A stretch of DNA of 64,000 bases, from IMG/VR virus record IMGVR_UViG_3300020477_000990, positions 186,001 to 250,000 of that record; one strand, given 5' to 3'. The translations under genes were made by a program, and so were the position numbers. Below the pieces are notes generated by a model that did not search any database, was not told where the DNA came from, and worked only from the letters and a program-made list of their open reading frames with translations. Of the stretch, positions 29,226 through 59,183 are shown piece after piece (the stretch's first letter is position 1; the number at the start of each line of letters is the position of its first letter).

Positions 29226-29253
29226 TTGACAAAACTAGCTAATTATGTATAAT
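29226..29253 (+). promoter_or_regulatory. sigma70-like early promoter
   Basis: TTGACA-16-TATAAT. Confidence 0.75.
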
Positions 29254-29270
29254 CATGTATATATAGCTAT

Positions 29271-30200
29271 ATGGAGAAGAAAAAATTGACAAATGAGGAT
29301 TTATTAGATATTCCTGAGTTTCTAAAGCGTCAAAGTAATGGCGATTCTGCCGAAACTGAAGTAAAACAGCCAGTTAAAGAAGAACCAAAGCCAGAAGTTG
29401 TCGAAGAAGTTAAAGAGCCAGAGAAGCCAAAAAAGCCTACGATTCAAGATCGTATGCAAAGACGATTTTTAACTATCATGGGTGATATACATGATGCATT
29501 TGAAGACGTATGGGATCGTAATGGTGATCCAATGAAGTTTAAAGCATATGATTATTTTGCTAAAGAAGAAATTCCTGGGGCTTTTATGAAAATGATTATA
29601 GCAGATGTTAATGAATGTTTAGATGAAGAACGTAAAGCACTTGATTGGAGAGCAATTCCAAAAAGTGAACGTACAGATATTCAAGAAGATTATGTTGAAA
29701 GTTTTGATTCATACACTAAAAAAGAAATGCAAACACATATTTCTTGGTGGGAAAGAATTATAAAAGACTGTGAAATATATAAAATTCAAAAATTAAAAGA
29801 ACGTAAGCCAAGAAGATTTAAAGCACCTAGTAAAGAAAAACTAGCTAAAAAAGTAAAATATAAAGAAAAAGATGATGATGCTAAATTAACATCAATAAAC
29901 CCAGTACTTATTATAGGAGCTCATGGATTAATAGTGTATAATAGCAAAACTAGAAAACTAGGGTTATATGAAGCAACACATAAACACCATGGATTAACAG
30001 TACGTGGTACTACAGTATTAAATTATGATAGTGAAACGTCAGTACAAAAAACACTCCGTAAGCCGGTTGAAGTATTAGAAAGAGTACATACAGGGGGAAT
30101 TCAAGCATTTAAAAATACACTTGAATCAGTTAAATCAACTGATGTGAAGCTTACAGGACGTTTAAATGCTGATACTGTACTTGTCCGTGTTTTTAACTAA
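29271..30200 (+). CDS. Hypothetical protein with N-terminal FtsZ-tail-like peptide
   Basis: aa 12-23 LDIPEFLKRQSN, P/E/K-rich linker, then globular 'YNSKTRKLG...KTLRKP' domain. Confidence 0.8.
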   Translation: MEKKKLTNEDLLDIPEFLKRQSNGDSAETEVKQPVKEEPKPEVVEEVKEPEKPKKPTIQDRMQRRFLTIMGDIHDAFEDVWDRNGDPMKFKAYDYFAKEEIPGAFMKMIIADVNECLDEERKALDWRAIPKSERTDIQEDYVESFDSYTKKEMQTHISWWERIIKDCEIYKIQKLKERKPRRFKAPSKEKLAKKVKYKEKDDDAKLTSINPVLIIGAHGLIVYNSKTRKLGLYEATHKHHGLTVRGTTVLNYDSETSVQKTLRKPVEVLERVHTGGIQAFKNTLESVKSTDVKLTGRLNADTVLVRVFN

Positions 30201-31284: not shown

Positions 31285-31953
31285 ATGATCGTTGGACTAG
31301 TAGGCTGGATAGGTAGTGGTAAAAATACAGTTGCTAATATACTAACAGAAAAGCATAGTTTTAATTCTGATTCATTTGCGGCACCATTAAAAGATGCAAC
31401 AGCACACATTTTTAATTGGCCTAGAGAAACATTAGAAGGTGATACAGATCGTAGTAGGCATTTTAGAGAATGCGTAGATTATTGGTGGCAATCAAAGTTA
31501 AATATTAAAAATTTTACACCAAGATTAGCATTACAAATAGTTGGTACAGAATTATTTAGAGAACACTTCCACCATGAAATTTGGTTAAACAGTTTAGAAA
31601 ATAGATACATATCAGCTGGTAAAAAACTTACAGTAGTTACAGATTGTAGATTTAGAAATGAAATACAATTTATTAAAAATTTAGGTGGATTTACAATACG
31701 TGTAAAACGTGGTCCAGATCCACATTGGACTACAATGGCAGAAGAAGCTCAACAAGGAGATGAGTTTGCTGAACAACAATTGGCTGATATTGGTATACAT
31801 AAATCCGAATGGGATCATACAGGAGCCCCTGTAGATTTTATTATAACTAATGATGGTACGTTAGAGCAGTTGCATGATAAGGTTAGTAGTGTAATAAAAG
31901 TATTAAGCAATATAACTAAAGTTAAAAGACAAAAGCAACGTGAAGTATTTTAA
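31285..31953 (+). CDS. gp1: Deoxynucleoside monophosphate kinase
   Basis: P-loop GWIGSGKNT, 'SFAAPLKD', 'PRLALQIVGTE', 'DCRFRNE'. Confidence 0.9.
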   Translation: MIVGLVGWIGSGKNTVANILTEKHSFNSDSFAAPLKDATAHIFNWPRETLEGDTDRSRHFRECVDYWWQSKLNIKNFTPRLALQIVGTELFREHFHHEIWLNSLENRYISAGKKLTVVTDCRFRNEIQFIKNLGGFTIRVKRGPDPHWTTMAEEAQQGDEFAEQQLADIGIHKSEWDHTGAPVDFIITNDGTLEQLHDKVSSVIKVLSNITKVKRQKQREVF

Positions 31954-32303
31954 TCTGGCATTAAATCACCTTGTCTCCATTTAAATTGATCAGTACTTAA
32001 TAAACGTTGACAATTAGCACATATAGTTTTTAGATTATCCCAGCTACTATTTTTTAAATTACCGTCAATATGAAACACATCCATTTGTGCAGAGTGTTTA
32101 GCTTTATACCCACACTTTTCACATATAGATTTTTTCTTATAGCCACTACTTTGCCAAGATGCAGTACCACCAATACCTTTACCTTTGCCTAGGCGTATAC
32201 ATTTATCACACATTTTTCTATAGTAAGTCTTATCACCTTTTTTATAATTAAAGGCGGCTGGTCTAGACTTACATTTAACACATAATTGACGTAATTCGTT
32301 CAT
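31950..32303 (-). CDS. Zinc-finger/HNH-like protein
   Basis: Four CxxC pairs; 'HIDG.L.N....NL.TIC.NC'; TAAATA-5-ATG at 32309-32314. Confidence 0.7.
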   Translation of the reverse strand: MNELRQLCVKCKSRPAAFNYKKGDKTYYRKMCDKCIRLGKGKGIGGTASWQSSGYKKKSICEKCGYKAKHSAQMDVFHIDGNLKNSSWDNLKTICANCQRLLSTDQFKWRQGDLMPD

Positions 32304-56375: not shown

Positions 56376-57533
56376 ATGGTTAATAGACCATTTTTAAAAA
56401 TAGAAGAAATCAAAAGAGCTGATTTTGAAAGAGTTATTCATGCGACTCAAGAAGATTCAAATTTCAGTTGCTATATTGCAATTCATACTTTAAAAAATGG
56501 TCCAGCTTTTGGCGGCATAAGATTTTGGAAGTATAAAGATTCACAAACACCATATAAAGATGTTTTAAATTTATCAAGAGCAATGACAACTAAATGTGCA
56601 ATTGCTGGAATACAGTTAAGTGGTGGAAAAACAGTTATTGAAGGAGTAGTTCATAGAGAAACAGGTAATCTTGGTGTTGAACCAAAACGAATATTAGGTT
56701 GGTTAGGCGACGCAATTAATTATTTAAAAGGTGATTATTATGCAGGGCTAGATGTTGGCTTTGATTTTGATATGTTAACAAAACTAAGATTACATACAGA
56801 ATATACTGCAACATATTCTGATCCAAATGTTGGTAGTTCATGTACTGCTTATAGTGTTTATAATTCTATGAAAGCCGCTGTTGAATATAAACTTGGTAAG
56901 CAATCACTTGAAGGTGTTAAAGTAGGTATTAAAGGTTTAGGAAAAGTTGGTTTTCAGTTAGCAAATTATTTGTGTGATGATGGTGCTAAATTATATTTTT
57001 CAGAAGTAGATCAAGATAAATTTAATCAGTTTAAAAATGAATCATTACCACCTAGGTGGGTATATAAAGTTGTACCAACATATAATTTGCATAGAGAAGA
57101 TCTTGATGTTTATTCTCCATGTGCATTAGGTAATGATATAAAATTGCATATGGCTGAAGAAATGAATTGTAAAATTATTTGTGGAGCCGCAAATAATCAA
57201 ATTGATTTATCTGAACCAGATAGAACAATAGAAGCATTAACTAAAAAAGATATATTATATATACCAGATAATTTGGCCAATGTTGGCGGGGTATTTAGAT
57301 CTGCTGGAACAATATTAAAATCAAGAGATGAAGAAGAATCATTTAAATTAATAGGAACATCATATCCAAGAACATTGCATATATTAAAAATAGCAGAAAA
57401 TTATAAAGTTACACCTAATGAAATTTGTAAAGAAATGGGTCTAGCGGCATCAGGAGAAGGTCAAAATAGGTTTAAACTTAATGTTGGTGGCCTTGGTGAT
57501 GTTTTTGAAGGCAATAATACCTATAATTATTAA
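56376..57533 (+). CDS. Glu/Leu/Phe/Val dehydrogenase (leucine dehydrogenase-like)
   Basis: 'GPAFGGIR', 'MTTK...AG...GGKTV', 'DVG', GLGKVG, 'SPCALG', 'GAANNQ', 'N.GG'. Confidence 0.9.
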   Translation: MVNRPFLKIEEIKRADFERVIHATQEDSNFSCYIAIHTLKNGPAFGGIRFWKYKDSQTPYKDVLNLSRAMTTKCAIAGIQLSGGKTVIEGVVHRETGNLGVEPKRILGWLGDAINYLKGDYYAGLDVGFDFDMLTKLRLHTEYTATYSDPNVGSSCTAYSVYNSMKAAVEYKLGKQSLEGVKVGIKGLGKVGFQLANYLCDDGAKLYFSEVDQDKFNQFKNESLPPRWVYKVVPTYNLHREDLDVYSPCALGNDIKLHMAEEMNCKIICGAANNQIDLSEPDRTIEALTKKDILYIPDNLANVGGVFRSAGTILKSRDEEESFKLIGTSYPRTLHILKIAENYKVTPNEICKEMGLAASGEGQNRFKLNVGGLGDVFEGNNTYNY

Positions 57534-58571: not shown

Positions 58572-59183
58572 ATGGCGGATTTAGATAGAAAGAAAAAAGA
58601 AGATAAAGCAAGAGGGCCGACCCCATCTCCACAACCATTACAACCAGGAGTAATGATGTGGGAAGCTGGAATAATGTATTTTAGTGAACCATTTGATGCT
58701 AAAACAACGCAACCAGTTATTAACACAATTATCGAAAAGAACTTATTGCCAAATTCACAAAGACCAAATGAACTTACGTTAGTAATTAATTCACCAGGTG
58801 GGCAAGTTCATTCAGCATTTGCTTTAATTGACACGATGAAAGGATCAGCTATTCCTGTAAAAACTGTAGGATTAGGTATGATAGCATCATGTGGATTATT
58901 AACATTTATGAGTGGAACAAAAGGACGTAGAGTGTTAACACCAAATACATCTATATTATCACATCAATATAGTTGGGGATCAGGCGGAAAAGAACACGAA
59001 TTATTTGCAAGAGTACGAGAATTTGAATTAAGCACAAAAAGAATGATTGAACATTACAAAAAATGTACAGGATTATCTGAAAAGAAAATTAGAGAGATAT
59101 TATTACCACCAGAGGACGTTTGGTTATCAGCCAAAGAAGCAGTCAAATATGGTATAGCAGATAAAATTGTAAAAACTTATTAA
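58572..59183 (+). CDS. clpP: ClpP-like serine protease
   Basis: 'INSPGG', 'IASCG' (Ser), 'SHQ' (His), 'EDVWLSA.EAV.YG..D' (Asp). Confidence 0.85.
   Translation: MADLDRKKKEDKARGPTPSPQPLQPGVMMWEAGIMYFSEPFDAKTTQPVINTIIEKNLLPNSQRPNELTLVINSPGGQVHSAFALIDTMKGSAIPVKTVGLGMIASCGLLTFMSGTKGRRVLTPNTSILSHQYSWGSGGKEHELFARVREFELSTKRMIEHYKKCTGLSEKKIREILLPPEDVWLSAKEAVKYGIADKIVKTY

What the first reader, a model, noticed from the sequence alone, without database searches (positions are those of the whole stretch)
29304..29339. Early protein begins with an FtsZ C-terminal-peptide mimic
Seen: aa 12-23 of ORF 29271..30200 read LDIPEFLKRQSN, followed by a P/E/K-rich disordered linker, behind a TTGACA-16-TATAAT promoter. 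Established: the conserved FtsZ tail (E. coli DYLDIPAFLRKQAD; alphaproteobacterial L[ED]IP[AS]FLRR type) is the docking site for FtsA, ZipA, MinC and ClpXP. Inference: a phage decoy that titrates or localises to divisome partners, arresting host division or tethering the globular C-terminal domain to mid-cell. Placing the motif at an N-terminus is unusual.
Basis: partly seen in the sequence, partly recalled or inferred. Interest (0 to 1): 0.8.

Follow-up and report, generated by a model that had tools for sequence, protein, structure and literature searches.

The report
Phage protein with FtsZ-tail look-alike
A marine T4-like phage gene starts with a strictly conserved copy of the short peptide that the bacterial division protein FtsZ uses to dock onto its partners; the same peptide occurs on some 40 unrelated phage protein families, which suggests phages commonly copy this docking tag, though no binding has been tested.

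Summary
ORF 29271..30200 (309 aa) reads LLDIPEFLKRQSN at aa 11-23, followed by a P/E/K-rich disordered linker, behind a perfect TTGACA-16-TATAAT promoter.

- **Conservation:** in 77 non-identical homologues (93% down to 34% identity), L11, L12, I14, P15, F17 and L18 are invariant while the linker varies freely. The motif is the most conserved segment of the protein.
- **Resemblance to FtsZ:** it matches real FtsZ tails almost letter for letter, for example ILDIPEFLKK at the end of Melainabacteria FtsZ.
- **Family:** the protein belongs to a large T4-superfamily family of unknown function (phrog_11903; 3318 clusters at 50% identity). Its usual ~130-aa N-terminal helical domain has here been replaced by the peptide, apparently once.
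- **Wider pattern:** DNA encoding L[DE]IP[DE/A]FL[RK][RK] occurs in 138 viral ORFs falling into about 43 unrelated protein clusters. Reversed-peptide controls gave 4 hits. Carriers include DNA methyltransferases, a helicase fusion, DUF1376 and many small proteins. The motif is near a protein end in 31 of 40 clusters, and no carrier scanned (30 with Pfam, 20 with PHROGs) is an FtsZ.

Best reading (confidence about 0.55): a short linear motif that mimics the FtsZ tail and engages host tail receptors such as FtsA, either to block division or to tether the protein. Binding, phenotype, host and the function of the globular part remain untested.

The parts
29226..29231 (+). -35 hexamer TTGACA
   Evidence: Read directly. 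Part of the only 12/12 promoter match in 24-36 kb. Invariant in four relatives' loci.
29248..29253 (+). -10 hexamer TATAAT, 16-nt spacer
29258..29265 (+). Conserved TATATATA block just upstream of the ATG. Possibly the transcription start region or a T4-late-like element; function not tested.
Evidence: Invariant in alignment A5.
29271..30200 (+). ORF of 309 aa, short form of family phrog_11903. An alternative start TTG at 29286 follows GGAG at 29273-29276.
   Evidence: PHROG E = 2e-48, matching only aa 38-308 to profile positions 126-383. Homologues; 3318 clusters at 50% identity.
29301..29330 (+). FtsZ-tail-like short linear motif LLDIPEFLKR (aa 11-20). The finding's span 29304-29339 covers aa 12-23.
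   Evidence: L11, L12, I14, P15, F17 and L18 are 100% invariant and R20 is 95% conserved in 77 non-identical homologues. Matches true FtsZ C-termini.
29337..29435 (+). Disordered P/E/K-rich linker, aa 23-55
   Evidence: pLDDT below 50 for aa 23-47. Mean column entropy 1.98 bits against 0.35 bits for the motif. Composition.
29436..29801 (+). Helical middle domain, aa 56-177, acidic (pI 4.9)
   Evidence: AlphaFold2 helices with pLDDT about 90. No PDB match.
29802..29870 (+). Conserved basic stretch RKPRRFKAPSKEK..., aa 178-200 (12 K/R of 23, pI 10.9)
29871..30197 (+). Conserved alpha/beta C-terminal domain, aa 201-309, the hallmark of the family
   Evidence: Invariant S208, N224, R228, K260, R263, G296 and R297. 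Fold matches only uncharacterised phage proteins.

Best explanation
The N-terminus of this phage protein is a short linear motif that copies the conserved C-terminal peptide of host FtsZ. It is displayed on a flexible tether of about 35 residues. The copy is expected to occupy the same peptide-binding sites that the real FtsZ tail uses: FtsA in most bacteria, plus ZipA, MinC, SlmA, ZapD, SepF or ClpX depending on the host.

Two consequences are possible and are not distinguished here. The peptide may compete with FtsZ filaments for their membrane anchors and regulators, which would delay or block division. Alternatively it may tether the conserved globular part of the protein (helical domain, basic stretch, alpha/beta domain; function unknown) to the membrane or divisome.

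**Shown:** the motif, its invariance, its identity with real FtsZ tails, the disordered tether, the conserved sigma-70-type promoter, replacement of the family's usual N-terminal domain, and recurrence of the same motif on many unrelated phage proteins.

**Inferred:** every step that involves binding, the host partner and the phenotype.
For: 1. **The motif matches the FtsZ tail consensus and real tails.** The window reads LLDIPEFLKR. Melainabacteria FtsZ ends ILDIPEFLKK, Nostoc FtsZ has GLDIPDFLKKRR and Clostridia FtsZ has GLDIPDFLRKYR; all of these ORFs carry the tubulin signature. The E. coli tail is DYLDIPAFLRKQAD (PMC4117426).
2. **The invariant positions are the functionally critical ones.** The counterparts of I374 and L378 (critical for ZipA, FtsA, MinC and SlmA binding; PMC4117426) and of F377 and L378 (key for ZipA; PMC10769210) never vary in the phage family. 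Positions 13 and 16, the counterparts of D373 and A376, do vary.
3. **The motif is under stronger constraint than the rest of the protein.** Column entropy is 0.35 bits in the motif, 1.98 in the linker and 0.65-0.86 in the folded domains. The motif is kept across two deep clades whose stem branches are 1.4 and 0.88 substitutions per site.
4. **The layout mirrors FtsZ.** It is a peptide, a disordered linker of variable sequence, then a globular body.
5. **The motif recurs widely in viruses.** The L[DE]IP[DE]FLRR scan gave 79 viral loci, the x=A variant 43 and the AAR/AGR-codon variant 23. Reversed-peptide controls gave 3 and 1. The ORFs fall into about 43 clusters, and the motif is near a terminus in 31 of 40. 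None of the 30 carriers scanned with Pfam has a tubulin/FtsZ domain; a further 16 carriers, scanned with PHROGs only, gave no FtsZ/tubulin family either.
6. **A free tail can work in trans.** Free FtsZ tail peptide competes with full-length FtsZ for SlmA (PMC4117426). Fragments 354-383 of FtsZ are inhibitory in vivo in E. coli (PMC10769210).
7. **The promoter is conserved.** A strong sigma-70-type promoter is invariant in relatives.
8. **Weak lead only.** The nearest named cluster in the ESM Atlas feature search includes FtsZ_C fragments, at score 0.53.
Against: - There is no binding, localisation or phenotype data. Everything rests on sequence.
- The host is unknown, so its FtsZ tail and its set of tail receptors could not be compared.
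- Monomeric tail peptides bind weakly: 20 uM to ZipA, 50 uM to FtsA and 81 uM to SlmA, against 0.21 uM for full-length FtsZ on SlmA (PMC4117426). A decoy therefore needs abundance or multivalency, and neither was tested.
- Many other carriers are DNA-metabolism proteins (ParB-like/MT-A70 methyltransferases, DUF1376, a helicase fusion). A divisome link is not obvious for these.
- The gene sits inside the structural module.
- AlphaFold2 confidence for the motif itself is low (pLDDT 50-58). That is expected for an unbound peptide but gives no information.
Confidence: 0.55

Rival explanations
1. The motif is a docking peptide for a different host hub, for example a replisome- or nucleoid-associated protein. 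On this reading its likeness to the FtsZ tail is convergent or incidental.
For: Many carriers are DNA-associated: ParB-like plus MT-A70 methyltransferases, DUF1376, a helicase-methyltransferase fusion, and small proteins in which the motif is followed by an AT-hook-like RGRPRK. The window protein itself has a conserved basic stretch.
Against: No known replisome hub recognises this consensus. The beta-clamp motif QL[SD]LF and the SSB tip DDDIPF-COOH do not fit (own knowledge). In the searched literature the strings DIPAFL and IPAFLR occur only in papers where they can be the FtsZ tail sequence; only one such passage was read in context. A peptide this close to the FtsZ tail would bind FtsZ-tail receptors anyway.
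Confidence: 0.2
2. The peptide is mainly a recognition tag for the ClpXP protease. FtsZ's C-terminus is one ClpX recognition site. The tag would time the destruction of this early protein, or would saturate ClpX.
For: ClpX is listed among the FtsZ-tail binders (PMC4117426; title of PMC3983244). The window encodes its own ClpP at 58572..59183. A distant short-form homologue lies two genes from a phage clpP.
Against: ClpP is common in large phages, and here it lies 28 kb away. Invariance falls on I, P, F and L, the residues that matter for FtsA, ZipA and MinC. No degradation data exist.
Confidence: 0.1
3. The motif is an intra-phage signal, either a capsid-targeting or propeptide sequence or a peptide that binds the phage sliding clamp.
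For: The gene lies among head, neck and tail genes. T4 packages proteins through N-terminal targeting peptides and tethers factors to gp45 through short terminal peptides (own knowledge).
Against: The same extended motif occurs on about 40 unrelated families in very different viral contigs, with GC from 0.30 to 0.70. The PA5oct homologue lacks the mass-spectrometry tag that its virion neighbours carry, although it is a long form without the motif. The I-P-E resemblance to a T4 protease site is not conserved, since position 16 is D or S in most homologues. The motif is unique in the window.
Confidence: 0.08
4. The resemblance is due to chance and has no function.
For: Short motifs can arise by chance.
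Against: Six positions are 100% invariant in 77 homologues next to a freely varying linker. There were 0 of 100 shuffles with a match. The motif is 20- to 26-fold more frequent than reversed controls in viral contigs.
Confidence: 0.02

Closest known systems
Conserved C-terminal peptide of FtsZ (CCTP / C-terminal tail; E. coli DYLDIPAFLRKQAD)
   Same: It has the same consensus, L-[DE]-I-P-x-F-L-[RK]-[RK]. The same positions are invariant. It is displayed at the end of a long disordered linker of variable sequence. AlphaFold2 predicts a short helix over E16-S22.
   Different: It lies at the N-terminus rather than the C-terminus. It is attached to a phage protein with no tubulin/FtsZ domain. The order is reversed, with the peptide before the linker. 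Position x is E, D or S here, against A in E. coli; D and E do occur in the cyanobacterial, Melainabacteria and Clostridia FtsZ found.
Phage and prophage cell-division inhibitors (lambda Kil, Rac KilR, T7 Gp0.4, DicB, SPO1 Gp56)
   Same: These are phage-encoded, often early, small or modular proteins that interfere with the host divisome (own knowledge; KilR preprint 10.1101/2025.01.07.631774 appeared).
   Different: There is no sequence relationship, since Pfam and PHROGs gave no such hit. As far as I know and as far as the searched library shows, none of them acts by copying the FtsZ tail. A division phenotype is unproven here.
Inhibitory FtsZ C-terminal fragments and tail peptides made in the laboratory
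   Same: A free tail peptide competes with FtsZ for SlmA and binds ZipA and FtsA (PMC4117426). Fragments 354-383 are inhibitory in vivo (PMC10769210). This is the mechanism proposed for the phage protein.
   Different: Those are artificial pieces of FtsZ itself. Here the peptide is a natural, conserved part of a viral gene.
phrog_11903 family (PA5oct gp192, Sinorhizobium phage phiM12 gp314, Caulobacter phage Cr30 gp005; all annotated hypothetical)
   Same: The middle helical domain, the basic stretch and the C-terminal alpha/beta domain are homologous. In PA5oct the gene has the same position directly upstream of the neck gene.
   Different: Those proteins are 365-388 aa long. They start with a helical domain of about 130 aa and have no motif. 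The window protein has the peptide and linker in its place.
Short-linear-motif mimicry by viruses of eukaryotes
   Same: A few residues copied from a host protein are placed in a disordered region. They are acquired convergently by unrelated viral proteins and give access to a host hub (own knowledge).
   Different: This is a bacterial system, and the phenomenon is not described for phages in the library searched.

Membership tests
FtsZ C-terminal peptide, as a linear-motif class | Consensus [DE]-[IV]-P-x-[FY]-[LI]-[RK]-[RK] | tested here: met
   The window reads D-I-P-E-F-L-K-R. Compared with true FtsZ tails and with the E. coli tail in PMC4117426.
FtsZ C-terminal peptide, as a linear-motif class | Hydrophobic contact positions (equivalents of I374, F377, L378) conserved while the x positions vary | tested here: met
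   I14, F17 and L18 are 100% invariant in 77 sequences. Positions 13 and 16 vary.
FtsZ C-terminal peptide, as a linear-motif class | Joined to the folded body by a long disordered linker of variable sequence | tested here: met
   pLDDT below 50 for aa 23-47. Linker entropy is 1.98 bits.
FtsZ C-terminal peptide, as a linear-motif class | Binds FtsA, ZipA, MinC or other tail receptors | not testable with these tools
   No multimer prediction or experiment was available.
FtsZ / tubulin protein family | Tubulin-type GTPase domain with the GGGTG[ST]G signature | tested here: not met
   There is no Pfam tubulin or FtsZ_C hit, and the fold has no PDB match. The protein is not an FtsZ.
phrog_11903 (T4-superfamily conserved hypothetical protein) | Conserved middle helical domain, basic stretch and C-terminal alpha/beta domain | tested here: met
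   E = 2e-48. Invariant columns. Foldseek BFVD E down to 6e-23.
phrog_11903 (T4-superfamily conserved hypothetical protein) | N-terminal helical domain of about 130 aa, as in the long forms | tested here: not met
   Profile positions 1-125 are unmatched. The alignment shows the domain absent. The domain was modelled from long forms.
Known phage division inhibitors (Kil, KilR, Gp0.4, DicB, Gp56) | Sequence membership in one of those families | tested here: not met
   No such Pfam or PHROG family was matched.
Known phage division inhibitors (Kil, KilR, Gp0.4, DicB, Gp56) | Expression causes filamentation or loss of the Z-ring | not testable with these tools
   This needs an experiment.
T4-type capsid-targeting or propeptide sequence | N-terminal peptide ending in a conserved L/I-x-E protease site, with the protein found in virions | tested here: not met
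   I-P-E is not conserved, since position 16 is D in 61% of homologues and S in others. The PA5oct homologue is not flagged by virion mass spectrometry.
Sliding-clamp binding peptide (bacterial QL[SD]LF; T4 gp45 L-D-F-L type) | Match to the clamp-binding consensus | tested here: not met
   LLDIPEFLKR does not fit either consensus. Both consensus sequences are from my own knowledge. No binding test was possible.
SSB C-terminal tip mimic (DDDIPF-COOH) | D-I-P-F with the Phe as the free C-terminal residue | tested here: not met
   There is an extra residue between P and F. The motif is N-terminal here, and in other carriers it is followed by LRR.

The most novel reading that the evidence does not exclude
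Copying the FtsZ tail is a general phage strategy that has evolved convergently. More than 40 unrelated phage protein families have acquired the same docking peptide at a terminus or in a linker, in contigs with GC from 0.30 to 0.70. They include methyltransferases, replication proteins, a tape-measure-like protein and tiny ORFs. All would plug into the host's FtsZ-tail receptors. This would be a bacterial counterpart of short-linear-motif mimicry by eukaryotic viruses. DNA-bound or oligomeric carriers would present multivalent tail arrays that imitate an FtsZ filament.
Probability: 0.4. Interest if true: 0.9.

Novelty: new variant of a known kind. Interest (0 to 1): 0.78.

Why it matters
Phages are known to interfere with host division, but the known inhibitors are unrelated one-off proteins with individually worked-out targets.

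A copied FtsZ tail would be a simple, transferable mechanism. About ten residues on a flexible tether would give any phage protein access to the hub that organises the divisome. That hub is FtsA, and by lineage also ZipA, MinC, SlmA, SepF or ClpX.

If confirmed, three things follow:
- A motif search alone could predict division-targeting proteins in uncultured phages.
- There would be natural peptide ligands for a validated antibacterial target site.
- Motif mimicry, a central theme in eukaryotic virology, would be shown to operate in phage-bacterium conflicts as well.

The finding also gives a first functional handle on a large T4-superfamily family of unknown function, with 3318 clusters at 50% identity.

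Tried and rejected
- **Function of the globular part.** Pfam gave only a sub-threshold Ter hit (E = 0.0048), judged chance. The Foldseek PDB search had a best E of 0.014 with TM 0.13. The profile against PDB sequences gave 0 hits. BFVD returned only uncharacterised homologues. The ESM Atlas gave nothing above 0.58. The long-form N-domain model had no PDB match.
- **A shared domain between the window family and small motif carriers (L099, L080).** hhalign aligned only the motif. Rejected.
- **A cultured phage carrying the motif, as a test bed.** L099 had no match among phages. The best relative of methyltransferase L090, Bradyrhizobium phage ppBdUSDA122-1, lacks the motif.
- **Host identification.** The window has no tRNA and no near DNA match to cultured phages. 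The closest tail sheaths are from PA5oct-like and Atu_ph07-like jumbo phages. The genome scan did not yield the host's FtsZ.
- **Other points.**
It was re-run without them.
  - The PA5oct transcriptome preprint does not give a temporal class for gp192.
  - Some motif hits are not genes: a palindromic cyanobacterial DNA repeat reads as EIPDFFKKSGI, two low-GC families look spurious, and the 41-aa ORF in L039 overlaps a 319-aa ORF in another frame. Tiny ORFs are therefore cited with caution.
Full report
**1. The observation**

The ORF at 29271..30200 (+ strand, 309 aa) is real. The conserved core begins one residue earlier, so it is LLDIPEFLKR, aa 11-20, 29301..29330.

A degenerate DNA pattern for the motif matches once in the window. 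None of 100 shuffles gave a match. No other ORF of 60 or more codons in any frame carries the motif.

Residues 23-55 are rich in E, K and P. AlphaFold2 predicts them as disordered, with pLDDT below 50 for aa 23-47.

TTGACA (29226-29231), a 16-nt spacer and TATAAT (29248-29253) form the only 12/12 sigma-70 match between 24 and 36 kb. The overall number of weaker promoter-like sites is not above shuffles. This block, together with a following TGTATATATAGC, is invariant in the four relatives' loci aligned (two distinct upstream sequences), whose proteins are only 56-71% identical. That argues for a working regulatory region.

The start codon is ambiguous. ATG 29271 has no ribosome-binding site. 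A conserved TTG at 29286 follows GGAG by 9 nt and was used by gene callers for several homologues. Either start leaves the motif within the first 20 residues.

**2. Genomic setting**

The window has 32% GC. It comes from a T4-superfamily myovirus. Its genes include:
- gp46/47-like nuclease, portal and major head protein;
- a gp15-like tail sheath stabiliser, a gp13-like neck protein, tail sheath and terminase;
- gp32-like SSB, UvsX, helicases, primase, ThyX and ClpP.

The closest cultured relatives by tail sheath are jumbo phages of the PA5oct and Atu_ph07 type, at 44-50% identity. There is no near DNA match and no tRNA, so the host is unknown.

The ORF lies between a leftward 611-aa virion protein gene and the rightward gp13-like gene. 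The same order is kept in relatives at 56-71% identity. A 36%-identical short form sits in a different neighbourhood of radical-SAM genes, ClpP and ligase.

**3. The protein family**

The ORF belongs to phrog_11903, a family of unknown function. Only aa 38-308 match, to profile positions 126-383.

Cultured-phage homologues are PA5oct gp192, phiM12 gp314 and Cr30 gp005. All are annotated hypothetical, are 365-388 aa long, and lack the motif. The PA5oct gene is also directly upstream of the neck gene. It does not carry the mass-spectrometry flag that its virion neighbours have.

A profile search finds 3318 clusters at 50% identity. Almost all are long forms.

The AlphaFold2 model has mean pLDDT 81.6. 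It shows:
- a helical middle domain, aa 58-177;
- a conserved basic stretch, aa 178-200;
- an alpha/beta C-terminal domain.

Neither the model nor the family profile matches any solved structure. BFVD matches are only uncharacterised homologues. The long-form N-terminal domain folds as a helical bundle (pLDDT 81) and also has no PDB match. The function of the globular part therefore remains unknown.

**4. Conservation of the motif**

Every one of 77 non-identical short-form homologues (34-93% identity) carries LL-x-IP-x-FL-[KR]-[KR] within its first 25 residues.
- L11, L12, I14, P15, F17 and L18 are 100% invariant, and R20 is 95% conserved.
- Position 13 is D, E, Q or N. Position 16 is E, D or S.
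- Mean column entropy is 0.35 bits in the motif, 1.98 in the linker, 0.86 in the middle domain and 0.65 in the C-domain.

On a tree built from the shared region, the short forms fall on one side of a branch. This needs one change of state, with SH-aLRT support of 87. Long branches meet there, so a single origin is likely but not proven. The short forms comprise two deep clades with stem branches of 1.4 and 0.88 substitutions per site.

The peptide has therefore been held fixed while the rest of the protein diverged extensively.

**5. Is it really like an FtsZ tail?**

A scan of 185,579 species' genomes for L[DE]IP[DE]F[LF][KR][KR] returned many ORFs with the tubulin signature in which the motif lies at the extreme C-terminus. 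These are genuine FtsZ proteins:
- Melainabacteria: ...NNILDIPEFLKK, end of protein;
- Nostoc: ...SGLDIPDFLKKRRTPRN;
- Clostridia: ...DDGLDIPDFLRKYR.

The window's LLDIPEFLKR differs from the first of these at two positions.

The literature adds the following.
- The E. coli tail is DYLDIPAFLRKQAD. It binds ZipA, FtsA, MinC, ZapD, ClpX and SlmA, and I374 and L378 are critical (PMC4117426).
- F377 and L378 are key residues for ZipA (PMC10769210).

These residues correspond to the invariant I14, F17 and L18.

In the paper library, strings such as DIPAFL and IPAFLR occur in papers that are, with two exceptions, on FtsZ, the divisome or septum placement. The exceptions are a review of bacterial degrons and a single EIPEFL hit in a Drosophila paper. 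Only one passage was read in context, in PMC4117426, where the string is the E. coli FtsZ tail. No paper describing a phage copy of the tail was found.

**6. A wider pattern found on the way**

| Scan of IMG/VR viral contigs | Loci |
|---|---|
| L[DE]IP[DE]FLRR | 79 |
| L[DE]IPAFLRR | 43 |
| AAR/AGR-codon variant | 23 |
| Reversed-peptide control 1 | 3, all one family |
| Reversed-peptide control 2 | 1 |

Only about 15-20 of the loci belong to the window's family. The 138 ORFs fall into 54 BLAST clusters, about 43 once three spurious-looking ones are removed.

Among the 40 clusters that have an uncut member, the motif is:
- within 30 aa of the N-terminus in 17;
- within 25 aa of the C-terminus in 14;
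- internal in 9.

Thirty carriers were scanned with Pfam and 20 with PHROGs (46 different ORFs); none has a tubulin/FtsZ domain. Those that could be named are:
- ParB-like plus MT-A70 DNA methyltransferases, the largest cluster;
- DUF1376, DUF5131 and DUF3310 proteins;
- a helicase-methyltransferase fusion;
- a tape-measure-like protein.

Many carriers are small proteins of 50-150 aa in which the motif is followed by a basic or AT-hook-like stretch. Some of the tiniest ORFs may not be genes.

The flanks resemble FtsZ tails too, with acidic or glycine residues before the motif (DDGLDIP...), as in Clostridia FtsZ. Several AT-rich contigs carry other small proteins that begin ...DLL[DE]IP[DE]FLK[RK], the same flavour as the window's.

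The motif is therefore a widespread, convergently acquired module in phage proteins.

**7. Mechanism**

The best-supported reading is that the N-terminal peptide is a short linear motif that mimics the FtsZ tail and engages the host's tail receptors.

The physical argument is simple. An exposed peptide with this sequence will bind the same pockets as the native tail. Free tail peptide does compete with FtsZ in vitro (PMC4117426), and C-terminal FtsZ fragments are inhibitory in vivo (PMC10769210).

The purpose cannot be decided here. It could be competition with FtsZ, giving a division block. It could instead be tethering of the conserved body to FtsA at the membrane or divisome. Replacement of the family's usual N-terminal domain by the peptide suggests a swappable targeting module in front of a conserved effector part.

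A quantitative caveat applies. Monovalent peptides bind at 20-80 uM, whereas full-length FtsZ binds SlmA at about 0.2 uM (PMC4117426). An effective decoy therefore needs high expression, oligomerisation, or display on DNA. The strong conserved promoter and the basic stretch are compatible with this but do not prove it.

The rivals are a different hub, a ClpXP tag, an intra-phage signal and chance. They are weighed in the Rival explanations section of this report.

**8. Comparison with what is known, and novelty**

The motif meets the sequence-level definition of the FtsZ C-terminal peptide, but the protein is not an FtsZ. It is a member of phrog_11903 that lacks that family's N-terminal domain. 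It is unrelated to Kil, KilR, Gp0.4, DicB and Gp56.

I rate it a new variant of a known kind. Phage interference with the divisome is known. Doing it with a copied FtsZ tail, and doing so repeatedly across phage families, is not described in the literature I could search. My own knowledge gives no counter-example, but the library is incomplete.

**9. Verdict**

The mimicry is well supported at the sequence and evolutionary level. Binding, phenotype, host and the role of the globular domains are untested.
- Confidence in the FtsZ-tail-receptor reading is 0.55.
- Interest is 0.78.

Noticed in passing
IMG/VR loci L004-L128 and L256-L271: The FtsZ-tail-like motif L[DE]IP[ADE]FL[RK][RK] occurs on about 43 unrelated viral protein clusters. 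Reversed-peptide controls gave 4 loci in 2 clusters. The motif is mostly at protein termini. Carriers include ParB-like/MT-A70 methyltransferases, DUF1376, DUF5131, DUF3310, a helicase-methyltransferase fusion and many small proteins.
   Followed up: partly
L259:3119-6082 (+): A 988-aa tape-measure-like protein (phrog_9570, E = 1e-34) carries GLDIPDFLKR at aa 31. It would be a motif carrier that may be delivered into the cell with the tail.
   Followed up: no
L099:1153-1602 (+), L114, L118 and L007: These small proteins begin with the motif, which is followed at once by an AT-hook-like KKRGRPRK. This suggests DNA-binding carriers.
   Followed up: partly
L203:3790-6285 (+) (Comamonadaceae MAG): An 832-aa ORF without the tubulin signature ends in FEIPDFLRKQAD, an E. 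coli-type FtsZ tail on what seems to be a non-FtsZ cellular or prophage protein.
   Followed up: no
Genome loci such as L136, L144, L198 and L228 (filamentous cyanobacteria): A short palindromic DNA repeat translates as [LF]EIPDF[FL]KKSGI in tiny ORFs. It is a repeat element, not a protein motif, and is a trap for motif searches.
   Followed up: partly
window 58572..59183 (+): The phage encodes a ClpP protease (Pfam E = 3e-33). A distant short-form homologue also lies two genes from a phage clpP (L254). This is possibly relevant because ClpX recognises the FtsZ C-terminus.
   Followed up: no
window 56376..57533 (+): A 385-aa protein has Glu/Leu/Phe/Val dehydrogenase domains (E = 2e-15 and 1e-13), an unusual metabolic gene for a phage. 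In Caulobacter a glutamate dehydrogenase (GdhZ) regulates FtsZ (own knowledge). No link was tested.
   Followed up: no
window 31950..32303 (-): An HNH endonuclease gene on the opposite strand is inserted between the dNMP kinase and tail sheath genes. A 118-aa minus-strand gene occupies the same position in relatives.
   Followed up: no
Long-form homologues P0086-P0120, first 35 aa: The long forms share a conserved N-terminal stretch, a basic run followed by EKYTGxEPxW, ahead of their helical domain. It may be another short motif.
   Followed up: no
L039:7797-7922 (-): A 41-aa ORF that is little more than the motif plus a basic tail has a good GGAG ribosome-binding site. It overlaps the 3' end of a 319-aa ORF in another frame, so it could be an overlapping gene, a frameshift product or a false ORF.
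   Followed up: partly
window 29271..29288: The start codon is ambiguous. ATG 29271 has no ribosome-binding site, while the conserved TTG 29286 lies 9 nt after GGAG.
   Followed up: partly
It had no bearing on the work.
   Followed up: no
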